Positions 40,668-53,259 of a stretch of 64,000 nt of DNA are shown here, in pieces; the stretch's first letter is position 1; every line of letters starts with the position of its first letter. The notes beneath the pieces were generated by a model. That model worked only from the letters and a program-made list of their open reading frames with translations. It had not been told where the DNA came from and made no database searches. The stretch lies in IMG/VR virus record IMGVR_UViG_3300046003_007892, positions 1 to 64,000 of that record. One strand, written 5' to 3'. The translations under genes were made by a program, and so were the position numbers.

Positions 40668-40740
40668 GAAAAATACCTCCGAGCCGAAGTGGCCCAAAGG
40701 TATTTATCTTCGTGTAATCAAACCTATGACGGTTCGAGAA

Positions 40741-40829
40741 TGGCTCCTAGTTGAGGAATCGAACCTCACTCGTTAGCCTCGCGGCCTACAGGGTAACAAC
40801 CTGCCCGCACACCTTGTGCGTTACTAGGA
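40741..40829 (-). tRNA. tRNA-Asn(GTT) with atypical long variable arm
   Basis: loop TTGTTAC, U1-A72, GGCC-GCGA-GGCT variable hairpin, CCA encoded. Confidence 0.75.
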
Positions 40830-40861
40830 ATAGCGATGCCCCGAAAGGCATCAGAGATAAG

Positions 40862-41173
40862 CTGGGCAGGCAGGGCTCGAACCTGCGACATTTCGATTCG
40901 CTTGTTCCCATGTTCCCATGGGCGCGGACTATATCTTCACCCTCAGCATTACCTGTTAGGGGCTGGGTGCTGTTTGGTCGTTATCGGGTTTGGCTCCCTC
41001 AGACCTAGTCTCTACACCTTCCGAAATACTCAAGGCCTTCTTTCGGCTCGGCTCGGGATTGCCACCGCCATTACGCGAGAGGTTTCCCCGAATTCTCCCA
41101 GATTTTCAACCTCAGTTTCCCGAGGAAGTGTCCATTGAACAGTCGAACGCTCTACCAACTGAGCTACAACCCA
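40862..41173 (-). tRNA. tRNA-Asn(GTT) split by group I intron (exons 41138-41173, 40862-40898), no CCA
   Basis: Exons join to a canonical 73-nt cloverleaf with loop CT-GTT-AA. Confidence 0.9.
40899..41137 (-). mobile_element. Group I intron, 239 nt, no ORF
   Basis: P GAATTCGGGGAAAC, Q AATCCCGAGC, R GTAGAGACTA, S AAGATATAGTCC; P1 with U.G at 5' splice site; terminal G. Confidence 0.92.
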
Positions 41174-41601: not shown

Positions 41602-41676
41602 TGGAGGCGCAGGGTGGTCTCGAACCACCGACATGCAGAATATGAATCTGCCGCTCTACCCCTGAGCTACTGCGCC
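41602..41676 (-). tRNA. tRNA-Met(CAT), probably elongator (Ile2 not excluded)
   Basis: loop TTCATAT, G1-C72, CCA encoded. Confidence 0.85.
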
Positions 41677-41729
41677 GTATTCCTTTTGCTGCCGCCCCAG
41701 CATCGAAACACTGGGACGGCGGCGAAACT

Positions 41730-41893
41730 TGGTGGACGTGCCAGGAATCGAACCCGGACAGTTGAGTTTCACCCCAACCGCATTACCCGGACGGACCCCG
41801 CCTCTGACTGTCTCCGGGTTCGCGACCCCTCGGACATCCTCGGACGAGGCACTCCGCCTCTATCAAACTCAACGGGTATCCCCGTCTACGCCC
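41730..41893 (-). ncRNA. 164-nt tRNA/tmRNA-like RNA with Ala identity (G3.U70, A73, CCA)
   Basis: GGGCGT/ACGTCC-A-CCA acceptor, T-arm CCGGG-TTCGATT-CCTGG, 8-bp stem enclosing ~95-nt insert. Confidence 0.6.
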
Positions 41894-41898
41894 GTAAA

Positions 41899-41974
41899 TG
41901 GTAGGCCCGGACGGGTTCGAACCGCCGACATTCGGTGTGTAAAACCGACGCTCTCCCAACTGAGCTACAGGCCC
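41899..41974 (-). tRNA. tRNA-Val(TAC)
   Basis: loop TTTACAC, CCA encoded. Confidence 0.92.
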
Positions 41975-42087
41975 TCAGGTCACCCTGAAAATCTCCCAGT
42001 GATTACCCCACCGCTTGGTCGGCAACCTCCGCCGCTGGGAGCGGCCTCTCTGACTGTCGCCATCCTGGCGCCGGTCGTATTCTTGTG

Positions 42088-42164: not shown

Positions 42165-42205
42165 TCACACAAACTGAGCTTTGATGCTCCTGACCTCGCC
42201 ACGTC

Positions 42206-42270
42206 TGGCTGTCCGGCGAGGGTTTCGAACCCTCCGCGCCTTGCCTGTCGGCCACCTAGGGACCAGACAG
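42206..42270 (-). ncRNA. 65-nt tRNA mimic lacking an anticodon arm
   Basis: 9-bp CTGTCTGGT/GCCGGACAG stem, T-arm GAGGG-TTCGAAA-CCCTC, CCA. Confidence 0.5.
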
Positions 42271-42345
42271 TCAGGAACATCTCTGCTAAGAACCCTTCCG
42301 CTTCTTCCCTCGCAGCTTACGAGGGCGTCCCCTTGGGATTCGAAA

Positions 42346-42410
42346 TGGCGGGGCGCCCGGATTTGACCCGGAGATCGTTCGCTTCAAGCGGGGCATCGCA
42401 ACCTAGCCCC
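42346..42410 (-). pseudogene. Degenerate tRNA-like element
   Basis: CCA end, T-arm with GTCAAAT loop, truncated D-arm, weak stem around TGA. Confidence 0.4.
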
Positions 42411-42452
42411 TAAGCTTGTGACCTTCCCCCTACGGGGCACACACCGATGAAA

Positions 42453-42777: not shown

Positions 42778-42779
42778 GT

Positions 42780-43070
42780 AGACATAATCCTGGTCACCCT
42801 TACCGCTCACCATTGGGCCTCCACCTGGGGGCTTCAACGCCAAGCCGGGGGATTGAACCCCGACAGATCATGTCCGTATCGGAACACGCCAACAGACCAC
42901 CAGCGAAGAAGGGATTCGAACCCTTCTGCCTCCCCCTTCGCCACCGTTACTGCCGAAACAGCCAAGGCATCGAACCTTGTCGGGTTTGGGTGCGCCGTGC
43001 AACGCTCTTGGTCAGTTCAAGGCCTTTGGACCGCCTGTAGGCGATCTGTTGGCGAGTTCCGATAGTCTTC
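42780..43070 (-). ncRNA. Structured RNA candidate between tRNA-Tyr and tRNA-Phe
   Basis: 22-bp stem (43043-43064 with 42877-42898) enclosing two T-loop hairpins; third T-loop hairpin 42846-42862. Confidence 0.55.
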
Positions 43071-43082
43071 ATATGTATTCAC

Positions 43083-50948: not shown

Positions 50949-51038
50949 TACTTGACGAGAATAGAACCTGTGTTAGTTGGTGTTCAACAGGTGGGTTCCA
51001 AGGGGGTGCCCACCGCAACCAGAAGAGATTTTTCTTTC

Positions 51039-51587
51039 ATGTTTGACATCAACGAAGGCGACCGCACCCTTCTCATCATCGACGGTTCGAACCTGTATTC
51101 GGCAGCCAAGTCCCTCGGTCTGGAACTGGACTTCAAGAGGCTCCTGTCCGCCGTCAAGGAAGAGGGCCGCCTTGTTCAGGCCAAATACTATACCGCGATC
51201 TCGGCCGACCCCGAAGAGTTCTCCCCCATCCGGGGTCTGGTCGATTTCCTCGACTACAACGGCTACTCGCTGGTCACCAAGCCCATGAAACGTTTCACGG
51301 ACTCGCAAGGCGTCTTGCGCACCAAGGGCAACATGGACATCGAGATGGCGGTGGACATGGTTCGGATGGCCGACCACGTCGATCACATCATTCTGTTCTC
51401 CGGCGATGGCGACTTCCGCCGCGTTGTTGAGGCCGTCCAGGAGAAAGGCGTCCGCGTCACGGTCGTCTCGACCATGAAGAGCCAGCCGCCCCAGATCGCC
51501 GACGAGCTTCGTCGTCAGGCCGACTGCTTCCTCGATCTCACCACCCTGGCCGCCGTCATTGGCCGGACACCGCCCGCCCCGAAATAA
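51039..51587 (+). CDS. NYN domain LabA/DUF88 protein
   Basis: IDGSNLY, KGNMDIEMAVD, LFSGDGDF, ELRRQAD.F.DL. Confidence 0.9.
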   Translation: MFDINEGDRTLLIIDGSNLYSAAKSLGLELDFKRLLSAVKEEGRLVQAKYYTAISADPEEFSPIRGLVDFLDYNGYSLVTKPMKRFTDSQGVLRTKGNMDIEMAVDMVRMADHVDHIILFSGDGDFRRVVEAVQEKGVRVTVVSTMKSQPPQIADELRRQADCFLDLTTLAAVIGRTPPAPK

Positions 51588-51644
51588 TTTTGTCTCCGTC
51601 ATAGATTTTTGGTAAACGAAAATCTCAACAGCAAAGGTTAACGA

Positions 51645-52346
51645 ATGATTCGTTCCACTCTCTTCGCGGTTCTCGCCGCATCCGCTTCCCTTCTGGCTTC
51701 GGCCGCTTCGGCTCAGGACAACCTGTCCTTCAACGTCGGCGTCACCTCCGACTATGTGACGCGCGGTTCCAGTCAGACCGGCCATGACGCCGCCATTCAG
51801 GGCGGCGCCGACTATGTGTTCGGCGACAGCGGCTTCTACGTCGGCGCATGGGGCTCCACCGTCGATTTCGGCGATGGCACCGATGCCGAACTCGACTACT
51901 ACGGTGGCTACCGCACGGTGGCGGCGGGTTGGGGTCTCGACTTCGGTCTGGCCTCCTACAACTACACCAACGCCCCGGCCGACATCGACATGGTCGAGGC
52001 CCTCGTGACTGCCACCCGCACCTTCGGGACGGTCGGCACCACCTTCCAGGTCGCCTACTCGCCCGACTACTTCAACATCGGCTCCGAAGGCGTCTGGCTC
52101 GAAGCCGGGGCCACCGTGCCGGTCGCCGACCGTCTGACCCTGTCGGGCTCCGTGGGCGCCCAGATCGTCGAAGAGCAGGGCTTCGGCAATGCCTCCTATG
52201 AGACCTGGAATGTCGGGCTGGGCTACAAGCTGACCGACAATCTGTCCGCCGATCTCCGCTACACGGGCAACAACCTCCGCGACACCGATTTCGGCGCCGA
52301 TTTCGCCGACGACACGGTCGCGTTCACCATCAACGCGGCCTTCTAA
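51645..52346 (+). CDS. TIGR02001/TorF-family outer-membrane beta-barrel
   Basis: Signal peptide; TSDYVTRGSSQT...AIQGGADY...YVGAWGSTVDF...ELDYYGG; C-terminal Phe. Confidence 0.85.
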   Translation: MIRSTLFAVLAASASLLASAASAQDNLSFNVGVTSDYVTRGSSQTGHDAAIQGGADYVFGDSGFYVGAWGSTVDFGDGTDAELDYYGGYRTVAAGWGLDFGLASYNYTNAPADIDMVEALVTATRTFGTVGTTFQVAYSPDYFNIGSEGVWLEAGATVPVADRLTLSGSVGAQIVEEQGFGNASYETWNVGLGYKLTDNLSADLRYTGNNLRDTDFGADFADDTVAFTINAAF

Positions 52347-52358
52347 GGAAAAGCGCAG

Positions 52359-53021
52359 ATGACCGATTTCTTCCAAGCAATCTCGACGGCGGCGGCAGCA
52401 ATGACCCCGCTGGAAATCTTCGCGACGGTGACGTCGGCCCTCTGCGTGTTTCTCGCAGGGAAGCGGAAGGTGATCAACTACCCCATCGGTATCGTGGGGA
52501 CGATTGCCTTTTTCTTCTTCTTCTGGAACGTCGGCCTCTACAGTTCCGCCATCCTCCAGGTGTTCTTCACCGCCGTTCAGTTCTACGGCTGGTGGTACTG
52601 GCTCAAGGGCAACAAGGGCACTCCTCCCCCGATCACGCGGGCAAACCGCAACTGGTTGATCGGGGGCGGGGTGGCCGCCATCGTCGGAGCCTACGCGCTG
52701 TCGCTGATCACCGGGGCCTTCAACGCCAACATGGCGTTCGCTGACGCGGTCATCTTCGGCCTCAGCGTGGTCGCCCAGTTCTTCATGGACCGCAAGAAGC
52801 TGGAAAGCTGGCTGGTCTGGGGCGTCGTCAACGTCCTGTCCATCTATGTGTACGGCAGCCAGGGTCTGGTCCTGACGACCGTCCTCTACGTCGCCTTCCT
52901 CGTCCATGCCGGTTACGGCTGGTGGCAGTGGTATCGGGAGTGGGAGGTACGCACCCGTAGCGAAGCCGAGACCAAGCGGGTCTGGCAGAACGCCGACGCC
53001 AGCAAGGGAACTGTGGTCTGA
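52359..53021 (+). CDS. pnuC: Nicotinamide riboside transporter
   Basis: NYPIGI, QFYGWWYW, SVVAQFFM.RKKLESWLVW..VN. Confidence 0.92.
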   Translation: MTDFFQAISTAAAAMTPLEIFATVTSALCVFLAGKRKVINYPIGIVGTIAFFFFFWNVGLYSSAILQVFFTAVQFYGWWYWLKGNKGTPPPITRANRNWLIGGGVAAIVGAYALSLITGAFNANMAFADAVIFGLSVVAQFFMDRKKLESWLVWGVVNVLSIYVYGSQGLVLTTVLYVAFLVHAGYGWWQWYREWEVRTRSEAETKRVWQNADASKGTVV

Positions 53022-53022
53022 T

Positions 53023-53259
53023 ATGAGTGCAGTCGAGATTGCTCGGAACCACAAGACCCTCCAGGTCGTGGACAACCTTGGCAACGAGTTTACCCTCTAC
53101 TGCAACGGCGGGGAAGTCATGGTAAGTCTCGTGGAGGTTCCGAAGGCCAAGGGGGAGGAGGCGGAGATCGGCCGCACCTTCCTCGATCTCGACACCCTTG
53201 AAGTCGTCCTCATGGAAGCCTTGGATTTCGTCCGGTCCAAGAATCCAAAGCTTCCATGA
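53023..53259 (+). CDS. Small hypothetical protein
   Basis: ATG 1 nt after pnuC stop. Confidence 0.55.
   Translation: MSAVEIARNHKTLQVVDNLGNEFTLYCNGGEVMVSLVEVPKAKGEEAEIGRTFLDLDTLEVVLMEALDFVRSKNPKLP

What the first reader, a model, noticed from the sequence alone, without database searches (positions are those of the whole stretch)
41730..41893. Mini-tmRNA-like RNA with alanine identity but no tag reading frame
Seen: acceptor GGGCGT/ACGTCC with G3.U70, A73 and CCA; T-arm; stem TTGAGTTT/AAACTCAA closing ~95 nt that carries two copies of AGAGGCGG.GT..GTCCG. At 164 nt it is about half a tmRNA, and I see no ANDEN-type tag. Known: G3.U70 is the AlaRS determinant shared by tRNA-Ala and tmRNA; alphaproteobacterial tmRNA is two-piece and permuted, unlike this. 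Inference: an alanylatable decoy for SmpB/EF-Tu or a peptide-releasing rescue RNA without tagging.
Basis: partly seen in the sequence, partly recalled or inferred. Interest (0 to 1): 0.65.

Follow-up and report, generated by a model that had tools for sequence, protein, structure and literature searches.

The report
Anticodon-less alanine tRNA-like phage RNA
A giant freshwater phage carries in its tRNA gene array a 164-base tRNA-like gene that should accept alanine but has no anticodon; it is an oversized, insert-bearing relative of the little-studied 'tRNA-like-domain-only' tmRNA mimics of phages, which may interfere with the host's ribosome-rescue system.

Summary
At 41730-41893 (minus strand), 5 nt after tRNA-Val, lies a 164-nt gene. 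It has a GGGCGU/ACGUCC acceptor (G3.U70), A73, encoded CCA and a canonical T-arm. An 8-bp helix capped by a 95-nt GC-rich insert replaces the anticodon arm. ARAGORN and Rfam call neither a tRNA nor a tmRNA. It is the only G3.U70 RNA in the 240-kb phage record, which has no tRNA-Ala, tmRNA or SmpB.

The idea is not new in kind. Mycobacteriophage DS6A has a published 'TLD-only' tmRNA, and I found about 20 more unannotated 68-106-nt minis in phage contigs. These share one plan, an invariant G3.U70 and a covarying T-stem.

This element is the largest and most divergent of them:
- It lacks the tmRNA UUCGAC/GGAC motifs.
- It has no credible tag frame.
- It has no relatives beyond identical copies in lake metagenomes.
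- Its insert is complementary to its own T-arm and 3' acceptor, so the predicted lowest-energy fold masks the tRNA-like domain.

Best reading: an RNA matured like a tRNA, chargeable with alanine and unable to decode, acting on trans-translation as an SmpB/EF-Tu decoy. That function is inferred, not shown. Rivals are a tRNA scaffold carrying a functional insert, or a rearranged relic.

The parts
41887..41893 (-). 5' acceptor strand GGGCGUA (p1-7). G3 pairs with U70. A7 is either mismatched with C154 or bulged.
   Evidence: Sequence. Rfam tmRNA alignment treats A7 as an insertion and pairs G8 with C154.
41873..41886 (-). D-region GACGGGGAUACCCG (p8-21). It can form a CGGG-GAUA-CCCG hairpin, or act as an unpaired D-loop analogue with a GG doublet. 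Position 8 is G, not U.
   Evidence: 23 of the 24 tRNAs of this phage have U8. The closest D-region among the minis is L193, ACGGGUAUCGCC.
41865..41872 (-). 5' strand UUGAGUUU (p22-29) of the 8-bp helix that replaces the anticodon stem (P2-like).
   Evidence: Sequence. The helix is kept in the constrained fold.
41770..41864 (-). 95-nt GC-rich insert (p30-124). It holds the hairpin GAGGC-GGAGU-GCCUC, the tandem GUCCGAGG words, a longer hairpin at p69-116, and the two AGAGGCGG copies at 41846-41861 and 41790-41805.
   Evidence: No Rfam match. No other copy or antisense target in the 240-kb record.
41807..41840 (-). Segment of the insert (p54-87) that is complementary to the junction, T-arm and 3' acceptor strand (p133-160) of the same RNA.
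   Evidence: RNAduplex gives -37.1 kcal/mol; 15 of 2000 dinucleotide shuffles are as good. This pairing is the basis of the alternative MFE fold.
41762..41769 (-). 3' strand AAACUCAA (p125-132) of the 8-bp helix.
41758..41761 (-). Junction CUGU (p133-136). Full phage tmRNAs have GGAC here and nearly all minis end in AC.
41741..41757 (-). T-arm CCGGG-UUCGAUU-CCUGG (p137-153).
   Evidence: With the acceptor it forms an exact 25-mer found only in phage or metagenome contigs and in 0 of about 185,000 bacterial genomes.
41730..41740 (-). 3' acceptor strand CACGUCC, discriminator A73 and encoded CCA (p154-164).
41899..41974 (-). Upstream neighbour tRNA-Val(UAC). Its CCA ends 5 nt before G1 of the element.
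41691..41723 (-). GC-rich spacer hairpin between the element and tRNA-Met. No U-run follows it, so it is not terminator-like.
41602..41676 (-). Downstream neighbour tRNA-Met(CAU). The array runs on to a terminator-like hairpin at 40671-40705.

Best explanation
The element is a phage gene for an anticodon-less tRNA-like RNA with alanine identity. It is of the same kind as the 'TLD-only' tmRNA of mycobacteriophage DS6A. It differs in that the helix standing in for the anticodon stem carries a 95-nt structured insert.

Proposed course, all steps inferred:
1. It is transcribed with the tRNA array.
2. RNase P cuts it 5 nt after tRNA-Val, and it ends in its encoded CCA.
3. Host AlaRS charges it through G3.U70 and A73.
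4. With no anticodon and no tag frame it can neither decode nor tag.
5. It competes with host tmRNA for SmpB, EF-Tu and AlaRS, or enters stalled ribosomes unproductively. Either way it damps tagging and degradation during infection.
6. The insert can pair with the RNA's own T-arm and 3' acceptor strand. It may therefore switch the tRNA-like domain between a masked and an exposed state.

Shown here: the anatomy, the array context, uniqueness of G3.U70 in the record, absence of a tRNA or tmRNA call, and the existence of a conserved class of similar phage RNAs. Inferred: processing, charging, SmpB binding and the effect on trans-translation.

My confidence splits as about 0.75 that it is a genuine, matured, non-decoding tRNA-like RNA, and about 0.3 that its role is in trans-translation. 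The figure given is for the whole statement.
For: - Anatomy: acceptor with G3.U70, A73 and CCA, a T-arm, and an 8-bp helix in place of the anticodon arm.
- Placement: it sits exactly like a tRNA gene in the array. It is the only G3.U70 RNA among the 24 tRNA genes of the record, which has no tRNA-Ala.
- Position 8 is G, whereas 23 of 24 phage tRNAs have U8. Rfam's tmRNA model aligns end to end with GA..GGAU..C in the D-loop region.
- None of 304 internal deletions yields a tRNA at ARAGORN's default threshold.
- Precedent: the DS6A TLD-only tmRNA, and a similar molecule that inhibits tmRNA (PMC4131195, PMC11915505).
- A class exists:
  - 8 distinct 82-102-nt minis sit in a conserved slot of one podophage clade.
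  - Further minis turned up in acceptor-motif scans.
  - G3.U70 is present in 18 of 18 aligned minis.
  - 7 of 12 acceptor and T-stem pairs have compensatory changes; 0 of 500 shuffles reach the covariation score.
- A model built from those minis without this element (R1) finds DS6A's element at 32.5 bits (E 7.5e-5). It ranks this element first in the window at 24.5 bits (E 0.004).
- The exact T-arm/acceptor 25-mer is absent from about 185,000 bacterial genomes. It is shared with phage tmRNAs and phage minis.
- Phage tmRNA tags end in hydrophobic residues such as LAA or VA. The only open frame here would end in GPSG.
Against: - The conserved tmRNA TLD motifs are not kept. Full phage tmRNAs with the same acceptor have GGUUUCGAC at the 5' side and GGAC before the T-stem. 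This element has GACGGGGAUAC and CUGU.
- Rfam scores are far below gathering.
- The R1 and R2 alignments use inner pseudo-acceptors, not the real 5' end. R2 scores it at 27.6 bits, barely above tRNA-Phe at 25.6 bits.
- The same acceptor is common in bacterial tRNA-Ala: 77 of 121 motif hits. The acceptor alone therefore does not point to tmRNA.
- The predicted MFE (-73.6 kcal/mol) is not the tRNA-like fold (-67.1). The gap of 6.5 kcal/mol compares with 0-2.8 for 19 other minis and 7 tRNAs of this phage.
- No sequence variation exists for a covariation test: four other lake metagenomes hold identical copies.
- No RNA-level evidence was available.
- No SmpB gene is in the record, though the record is only about 45% complete.
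Confidence: 0.35

Rival explanations
1. Natural tRNA scaffold. The functional part is the 95-nt insert, acting as a protein-binding or sponge RNA. The acceptor and T-arm module serves only to recruit RNase P, 3' trimming and the CCA enzyme and to stabilise the RNA. Alanine charging would be incidental.
For: - The insert sits on an extended anticodon-type stem, which is the geometry used in engineered tRNA scaffolds (my own knowledge).
- It carries repeated words: AGAGGCGG twice, GUCCGAGG in tandem, and GACAGUCAGAG, which is shared with the next spacer.
- Neighbouring spacers also hold structured RNAs containing T-arm-like hairpins (z = -3.9 for 42778-43082).
- The element is 60-100 nt longer than every other mini.
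Against: - The insert has no Rfam match.
- It has no second copy or antisense target in 240 kb, and no homologue anywhere.
- The repeats are only weakly significant (p about 0.02-0.03).
- A pure scaffold gives no reason to keep G3.U70 and A73, which are invariant across the mini class.
Confidence: 0.22
2. Relic. A tRNA-Ala or TLD gene rearranged by duplication or inverted duplication inside a fast-evolving tRNA array. It is transcribed and perhaps processed but has no selected function.
For: - Inner pseudo-acceptor strands and a weak internal direct repeat.
- A 34-nt segment complementary to the RNA's own T-arm and acceptor, as an inverted duplication would leave.
- The MFE is not the tRNA-like fold, unlike all other minis.
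- It is an orphan with no diverged relatives.
- T-arm-like debris lies in adjacent spacers.
Against: - The acceptor, T-loop, discriminator, CCA and array spacing are all intact.
- The 8-bp closing helix is perfect.
- The sequence is identical in five independent lake metagenomes. That shows recent spread, not constraint.
Confidence: 0.2
3. A real but aberrant one-piece tmRNA. Translation would resume at GCG (p37-39), after UAGAG, and add a 24-residue tag ending in GPSG before UAA at p109-111.
For: - Frame 1 is open up to the UAA at p109-111.
- The UAG-NN-GCN spacing resembles the E. coli resume context UAGUC-GCA (my own knowledge, not tested here).
Against: - The putative resume codon lies inside the stable GAGGC/GCCUC hairpin.
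- There is no PK1-like pseudoknot match.
- The tag end GPSG is unlike the 29 phage tmRNA tags seen, which end in LAA, LLA, VA or AA.
- An open frame of 36 codons is unremarkable in GC-rich RNA.
- ARAGORN finds no tmRNA.
Confidence: 0.05
4. An ordinary tRNA gene interrupted by an intron or insertion that is spliced out to give a decoding tRNA.
For: - A neighbouring tRNA does carry a group I intron.
- Some splice choices would leave 7-nt loops, for example UUGAUAA or UUGUGAA (sequence).
Against: - 95 nt is far below the size of the group I intron next door (about 240-250 nt) and has no RF00028 match.
- 0 of 304 deletion variants are called tRNA at ARAGORN's default threshold.
- The D-arm lacks U8 and has a 4-nt loop.
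- G3.U70 would clash with any non-alanine anticodon.
Confidence: 0.03
5. A dedicated alanine donor for a reaction off the ribosome, such as an aminoacyl-tRNA transferase acting on the cell envelope or on proteins. Lacking an anticodon would keep it out of translation.
For: AlaRS needs only the acceptor helix, and some transferases recognise mainly the acceptor and T-arm (my own knowledge). G3.U70 is invariant across the class.
Against: No candidate transferase was identified near the element or looked for across the record. There is no precedent in phages.
Confidence: 0.05

Closest known systems
TLD-only tmRNA of mycobacteriophage DS6A (JN698994 28478-28560; tmRNA Website entry cited in PMC4131195 and PMC11915505)
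   Same: - Phage-encoded, one piece, acceptor with G3.U70 and A73.
- A T-arm with the same UUCGAUU loop.
- A helix in place of the anticodon arm, and no tag frame.
- Missed by standard annotation: there is no feature in the GenBank record.
   Different: - DS6A is 83 nt with a short capped helix. It keeps GGUGGUCGAC and GCAC, and its MFE is the tRNA-like fold.
- This element is 164 nt with a 95-nt insert, GACGGGGAUAC and CUGU, an A7 mismatch or bulge, and a competing fold.
- DS6A does not encode CCA (its tail is ACUA); this element does.
Unannotated 68-106-nt TLD-like minis in IMG/VR and metagenome phage contigs (for example L002/L146, L139, L136, L177, L193, L154-L163)
   Same: - Common plan: 7-bp acceptor with G3.U70, then a 9-12-nt D-loop analogue with GG, a helix closing a variable insert, a short junction, the T-arm, and A73-C74.
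- Several share the exact T-arm/acceptor 25-mer.
- Many sit where tRNA genes sit.
   Different: They are shorter, almost all end the junction in AC, and they fold natively as a TLD. One clade shows conserved synteny and covariation. This element has no relatives and no covariation data.
Full-length tmRNAs of large phages, including permuted (two-piece) genes in XacN1, X1, CcrBL9/CcrSC/BL47 and a 455-kb IMG/VR phage
   Same: The same kind of acceptor and T-arm. L004/L005 differ at only one position of the 25-mer. They are carried by jumbo phages, sometimes next to tRNA genes.
   Different: They are about 290-440 nt, with pseudoknots, GG-UUCGAC and GGAC motifs, and tag frames ending in LAA, VA or AA. 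This element has none of these.
CDS-less organellar tmRNAs (jakobid mitochondria, Mallomonadaceae plastids; PMC11915505)
   Same: A TLD without a tag reading frame, presumed still to work with SmpB.
   Different: They are organellar and about 65 nt, with no insert. Their mechanism is equally unknown.
tRNA-Ala
   Same: The acceptor GGGCGUG/CACGUCC with A73 and CCA is common in bacterial tRNA-Ala (77 of 121 motif hits). AlaRS identity elements are shared.
   Different: This element has no anticodon loop, no U8 and no canonical D-arm. It is not called by ARAGORN or by RF00005.
Stable non-tRNA RNAs encoded in the T4 tRNA cluster (species 1 and 2, rnaC/rnaD). Recalled from my own knowledge, not checked here.
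   Same: Small stable RNAs of unknown function, co-transcribed and processed with phage tRNAs.

Membership tests
tmRNA (RF00023 / RF04321) | tRNA-like domain: 7-bp acceptor with G3.U70, discriminator A, CCA, and a T-arm | tested here: met
   Sequence. The Rfam alignment matches the T-arm and 3' acceptor almost letter for letter.
tmRNA (RF00023 / RF04321) | Conserved D-loop motif GG-UUCGAC and GGAC before the T-stem | tested here: not met
   The element has GACGGGGAUAC and CUGU. Full phage tmRNAs with the same acceptor have GGUUUCGAC and GGAC.
tmRNA (RF00023 / RF04321) | mRNA-like domain: resume codon after PK1, and a short tag frame ending in hydrophobic residues plus a stop | tested here: not met
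   The only frame (GCG at p37 to UAA at p109) ends in GPSG and starts inside a hairpin. The 29 phage tags seen end in LAA, VA or AA. ARAGORN finds no tmRNA.
tmRNA (RF00023 / RF04321) | Score at or above Rfam's gathering threshold (47 bits) | tested here: not met
   RF00023 scores 5.4 bits (E 3.1). RF04321 scores 12.7-15.2 bits.
tmRNA (RF00023 / RF04321) | Binds SmpB and is alanylated | not testable with these tools
   No RNA-protein or charging assay is available. No SmpB gene is in the 240-kb record.
TLD-only tmRNA-like RNAs (DS6A type and the phage minis found here) | Plan: acceptor with G3.U70 and A73, a D-loop analogue with GG, a helix replacing the anticodon arm, a T-arm, and no tag frame | tested here: met
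   Table of 20 minis alongside this element. G3.U70 is present in 18 of 18 aligned minis.
TLD-only tmRNA-like RNAs (DS6A type and the phage minis found here) | Junction ending in AC directly before the T-stem | tested here: not met
   17 of the 20 minis end the junction in AC. This element has CAAC followed by an extra UGU.
TLD-only tmRNA-like RNAs (DS6A type and the phage minis found here) | Recognised by a covariance model built from other members | tested here: inconclusive
   R1 gives 24.5 bits (E 0.004), the top hit in the window, against 18.8 bits for the best tRNA. The same model gives DS6A 32.5 bits. The alignment uses an inner pseudo-acceptor, however. R2 gives 27.6 bits against 25.6 bits for tRNA-Phe.
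TLD-only tmRNA-like RNAs (DS6A type and the phage minis found here) | The tRNA-like fold is the minimum-energy fold | tested here: not met
   The gap is 6.5 kcal/mol here, against 0-2.8 for 19 minis and 7 tRNAs of this phage.
Canonical tRNA (RF00005), including tRNA-Ala | Cloverleaf with U8, a D-arm with G18G19, and a 7-nt anticodon loop | tested here: not met
   No ARAGORN or RF00005 call, even at E up to 10. Position 8 is G, and the D hairpin has a 4-nt loop.
tRNA interrupted by a group I intron | An intron with a group I core whose removal restores a tRNA | tested here: not met
   No RF00028 match in the insert, whereas the neighbouring intron is detected. None of 304 deletion variants is called a tRNA at the default threshold.
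Y RNA-like YrlA (RF02553) | A Ro-binding stem formed by the RNA ends plus an internal tRNA-like module, with a Ro/TROVE partner | tested here: not met
   13.8 bits against a gathering score of 69, and that alignment spans the next tRNA. The ends here form an acceptor with CCA. No TROVE protein is in the record.

The most novel reading that the evidence does not exclude
Phage anticodon-less alanine tRNA-like RNAs form a widespread, functionally coherent family that reprogrammes ribosome rescue. They would block tagging by the host tmRNA-SmpB system, or add a bare alanine. Stalled chains could then be released untagged by other factors, possibly including this phage's own domain-1-less RF1-like protein. 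This 164-nt member would add a regulatory module: an insert that reversibly masks its own T-arm and acceptor, making it a switchable decoy.
Probability: 0.12. Interest if true: 0.8.

Novelty: new variant of a known kind. Interest (0 to 1): 0.55.

Why it matters
TLD-only tmRNA mimics are known from a single phage (DS6A) and a few organelles, and their biology is essentially unstudied.

This analysis shows that standard annotators miss such genes. ARAGORN, Rfam and the GenBank records all fail to report them. It also shows they are common in phage contigs: at least about 20 distinct sequences, one clade with conserved synteny, a covarying T-stem and an invariant G3.U70.

That makes a concrete question testable: do phages switch off, or bypass, the host's trans-translation tagging with a small chargeable RNA?

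The present element is the most elaborate member. It is about twice the usual size and has an insert that can pair with its own tRNA-like domain. If that is a switch, it would be a new way of regulating a tRNA mimic. If it is a relic, it documents how tRNA arrays of giant phages decay and rearrange.

Tried and rejected
1. Intron hypothesis. 304 internal deletions gave no tRNA call at ARAGORN's default threshold. At an 80% threshold any anticodon appears, which is uninformative.
2. Natural variation for a covariation test. Four other lake metagenomes hold the element with zero differences. The neighbouring 406-aa protein finds only the identical 79-kb contig.
3. Host inference from the T-arm/acceptor motif. 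The exact 25-mer is in no bacterial genome. The relaxed motif hits tRNA-Ala and tRNA-Val of many phyla and says nothing about the host.
4. Derivation from a full tmRNA by deletion. The insert shows no meaningful similarity to three full tmRNAs with the same acceptor or to the BL47 tmRNA.
5. Shared 'tmRNA then tRNA-Met' gene order with Caulobacter jumbo phages. The order is similar, but the tRNA sequences are only about 55-70% identical, so I do not rely on it.
6. Antisense targets or extra copies in the 240-kb record: none.
7. Y RNA reading: no Rfam support and no Ro protein.
8. TGA recoding.
   - Prompted by an in-frame TGA at a Trp position in the phage's RF1-like gene.
   - Code 4 opens overlapping frames everywhere, as expected for GC-rich DNA.
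   - A conserved exported-protein homologue aligns without stops.
   - I therefore name no alternative code.
9. Covariance models R1 and R2 as discriminators. They rank the element first, but by small margins and through inner pseudo-acceptors.
10. The 703-aa ORF at 50973-53084(-), used as a taxonomic probe, proved to be antisense to real plus-strand genes.
11. Mao et al. 2009 and the T4 rnaC/rnaD literature could not be retrieved.

Full report
**Setting.** The window is the first 64 kb of a 240,363-bp IMG/VR virus record. The record is linear, and CheckV rates it about 45% complete, so this is a very large phage. Nearly identical DNA occurs in several lake-water metagenomes. The similar proteins found among cultured phages belong to Caulobacter jumbo phages of the genus Bertelyvirus. 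An exported-protein homologue at 51645-52289(+) is 36% identical to CcrBL9 gp342. The host is not established. The element lies in a minus-strand tRNA array spanning 43262 to 40741. That array ends at a terminator-like hairpin at 40671-40705.

**Observation.** I read the minus strand of 41730-41893; p is the position in the 164-nt RNA.
- p1-6 GGGCGU pairs with p155-160 ACGUCC, giving G3.U70.
- A73 and an encoded CCA follow at p161-164.
- The T-arm is CCGGG-UUCGAUU-CCUGG.
- An 8-bp helix, UUGAGUUU/AAACUCAA, closes 95 nt.
- The insert holds two AGAGGCGG copies.
- The seventh acceptor pair is either an A.C mismatch or, with A7 bulged, G8-C154. Rfam's tmRNA model aligns it the second way.
- G1 lies 5 nt after the CCA of tRNA-Val(UAC), the usual spacing in this array.
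- 22 of the phage's 24 tRNAs encode CCA, 23 have U8, and none has G3.U70. The record contains no tRNA-Ala.

The feature is therefore real and not a chance arrangement. ARAGORN calls nothing here, and Rfam at gathering thresholds calls nothing either.

**It is not an ordinary tRNA, with or without an intron.**
- RF00005 does not match even at E up to 10.
- Position 8 is G, and the D region is a CGGG-GAUA-CCCG hairpin or an unpaired GG-containing loop.
- None of 304 internal deletions produces a tRNA at ARAGORN's default threshold.
- The insert has no group I signature. The genuine group I intron in the tRNA at 40861-41173 is detected.

**It is not a standard tmRNA.**
- RF00023 aligns end to end but scores only 5.4 bits. 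RF04321 scores 12.7-15.2 bits over the T-arm and acceptor. The gathering score is 47.
- Full tmRNAs with the same acceptor have GGUUUCGAC after the acceptor and GGAC before the T-stem. This holds for L138, L140, L142 and the permuted L004/L005. The element has GACGGGGAUAC and CUGU.
- The only open frame runs from GCG at p37 to UAA at p109. It begins inside a stable hairpin and would end in GPSG. The 29 phage tmRNA tags I collected end in LAA, LLA, VA or AA.

**Precedent and a wider class.**
- The tmRNA literature records one phage 'TLD-only' tmRNA, in mycobacteriophage DS6A. It notes that a similar molecule strongly inhibits tmRNA, perhaps by titrating SmpB. CDS-less tmRNAs are also known in some organelles (PMC4131195, PMC11915505).
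- The exact 25-mer of the T-arm plus acceptor is absent from about 185,000 bacterial genomes. It occurs in phage and metagenome contigs, in full tmRNAs and in short TLD-like genes of 68-101 nt.
- One podophage clade is related to the Streptomyces Beephvirinae. It carries such a mini directly after a phrog_8424 gene, in the slot where cultured relatives have a tRNA array.
- A relaxed acceptor scan of IMG/VR gave 29 tmRNAs, 10 tRNA-Ala and 30 uncalled hits. At least 13 of the uncalled hits are further minis.
- All share one plan: acceptor, a 9-12-nt GG loop, a helix closing a variable insert, a junction that usually ends in AC, the T-arm, and A73-C74.
- In an 18-sequence alignment, G3.U70 is invariant and 98.6% of cells pair. 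Seven of the 12 acceptor and T-stem pairs show compensatory changes, and 0 of 500 shuffles reach the covariation score.
- DS6A's element is at JN698994 28478-28560 and is unannotated. A model built only from the podophage-clade and metagenome minis finds it at 32.5 bits.

**Where this element fits.** It follows the class plan but is an outlier.
- It is 164 nt, against 68-106 nt for the others.
- Its junction is CUGU.
- The seventh acceptor pair is imperfect.
- It has a 95-nt insert.

Model R1 ranks it first in the window at 24.5 bits (E 0.004), with the best tRNA at 18.8 bits. R2 gives 27.6 bits against 25.6 bits for tRNA-Phe. Both alignments use inner pseudo-acceptor strands instead of the true 5' end. 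I therefore count this test as inconclusive.

**Unexplained feature.** Positions 54-87 of the insert are complementary to positions 133-160, which cover the junction, T-arm and 3' acceptor.
- The duplex energy is -37.1 kcal/mol. Shuffled inserts give -28.1 +/- 3.1, and 15 of 2000 are as good.
- As a result the unconstrained MFE (-73.6 kcal/mol) is a long hairpin that hides the tRNA-like domain. The fold constrained to form the acceptor and T-arm is -67.1 kcal/mol.
- Nineteen other minis and seven tRNAs of this phage have gaps of 0-2.8 kcal/mol.

This could be a switch, self-masking, or the scar of an inverted duplication. There is also a weak internal direct repeat (p about 0.03).

**No comparative or expression evidence.** Four further lake metagenomes carry the element with no differences. 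No diverged relative exists in IMG/VR, the JGI metagenome contigs or the phage collection. No RNA run holds it. The record has no second copy and no antisense target.

**Other translation genes in the record.** There is no SmpB, AlaRS, RtcB or Ro gene. There is an RF1-like gene lacking domain 1. It has a PxT-type PPT motif and GGQ, and lies outside the window at about G000 93104-93784(-). It has an in-frame TGA where RF1 has Trp. General TGA recoding is not supported. The possibly related Caulobacter jumbo phages carry unannotated permuted tmRNAs with the tag VNAANDNDVVVSTMTSVKLAA.

**Conclusion.** The element is best described as a new, insert-bearing variant of the TLD-only tmRNA-like RNAs of phages. 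It is very probably matured like a tRNA and chargeable with alanine, and it cannot decode or tag.

Its most likely role is interference with, or an unproductive shortcut of, trans-translation, as an SmpB/EF-Tu/AlaRS decoy. That rests on analogy, and several points weaken it: the missing SmpB-site motifs, the competing fold and the lack of relatives. The serious rivals are a tRNA scaffold for a functional insert and a rearranged relic.

Noticed in passing
RF00028 matches 40906-41155 at 50.1 bits, right at the gathering score.
   Followed up: partly
window 40741-40829 (-); outside the window G000:C1:83023-83116, 83131-83217 and 141056-141146: tRNA-Asn (89 nt), two tRNA-Lys (94 and 87 nt) and tRNA-Cys (91 nt) carry long variable arms, which is unusual for these isoacceptors. 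Caulobacter phage CcrBL9 also has an 87-nt tRNA-Lys(CUU).
   Followed up: partly
window 42778-43082 (-): A 305-nt spacer in the tRNA array folds far better than shuffles (z = -3.9). A 25-bp stem (42877-42901 with 43040-43064) encloses T-arm-like hairpins, one of them stacked on a 7-bp acceptor-like stem. This may be another tRNA-like non-coding RNA. It has no Rfam family, and the record has no Ro/TROVE gene.
   Followed up: partly
window 42165-42452 (-) and 41975-42087 (-): Two further array spacers. The first holds two T-arm-like hairpins (z only -0.8). The second shares the word GG(A/C)GACAGUCAGAG with the element's insert (p about 0.02).
   Followed up: partly
outside the window: G000:C1:139655-139730 (+): A tRNA with anticodon CUA (amber suppressor type; ARAGORN labels it Pyl). 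I did not test whether TAG is recoded.
   Followed up: no
outside the window: G000:C1 about 93104-93784 (-) (L167:1426-2106): An RF1-like release-factor gene lacking domain 1, with a PPT motif and GGQ. It has an in-frame TGA at the position of a conserved RF1 tryptophan. The 183-aa part downstream of the TGA scores 65 bits to PF00472.
   Followed up: partly
window 50973-53084 (-) versus 51645-52289 (+): The 703-aa minus-strand ORF is an antisense artefact. The real genes are on the plus strand and include homologues of the CcrBL9 exported protein and a PnuC-like transporter. Long ORFs in this GC-rich phage need checking.
   Followed up: yes
L007 (AP018399 about 37.2 kb), L010 (OQ427096 about 121 kb), L257/L251/L252 (CcrBL9, BL47, CcrSC about 149 kb): ARAGORN calls permuted (two-piece) tmRNA genes with normal tags in cultured jumbo phages XacN1, X1 and three Caulobacter Bertelyvirus phages. 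No feature is annotated over the stretches I fetched in XacN1, X1 and CcrBL9; I did not check the BL47 and CcrSC annotation.
   Followed up: partly
L243:1501-1583 (JN698994 28478-28560): The published TLD-only tmRNA of mycobacteriophage DS6A has no feature in the GenBank record. It lies between gp33 and the DNA pol III gene.
   Followed up: yes
L008 about 520-650 (Pectobacterium phage phiTE, JQ015307 about 105.6 kb): An unannotated tRNA-like sequence of about 130 nt, next to tRNA-Cys and tRNA-Leu. It has the acceptor GGCAATT/AATTGCC, a canonical T-arm and a long insert in place of the anticodon arm. It has C3-G70, so no alanine identity.
   Followed up: no
L148-L153 (for example L148:2307-2620): In several contigs of the podophage clade, a tRNA-Tyr gene with its own acceptor end is inserted exactly at the 3' end of the mini, replacing its terminal CA. 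This suggests the slot is a hotspot for tRNA gene gain.
   Followed up: no
L006:12002-12122 (-): A tRNA-like RNA of about 120 nt, directly after tRNA-Val(UAC) in another phage's tRNA array. It has the same T-arm/acceptor 25-mer but A3-U70 (GGACGUG/CACGUCC) and an extra T-arm-like hairpin near its 5' end.
   Followed up: no
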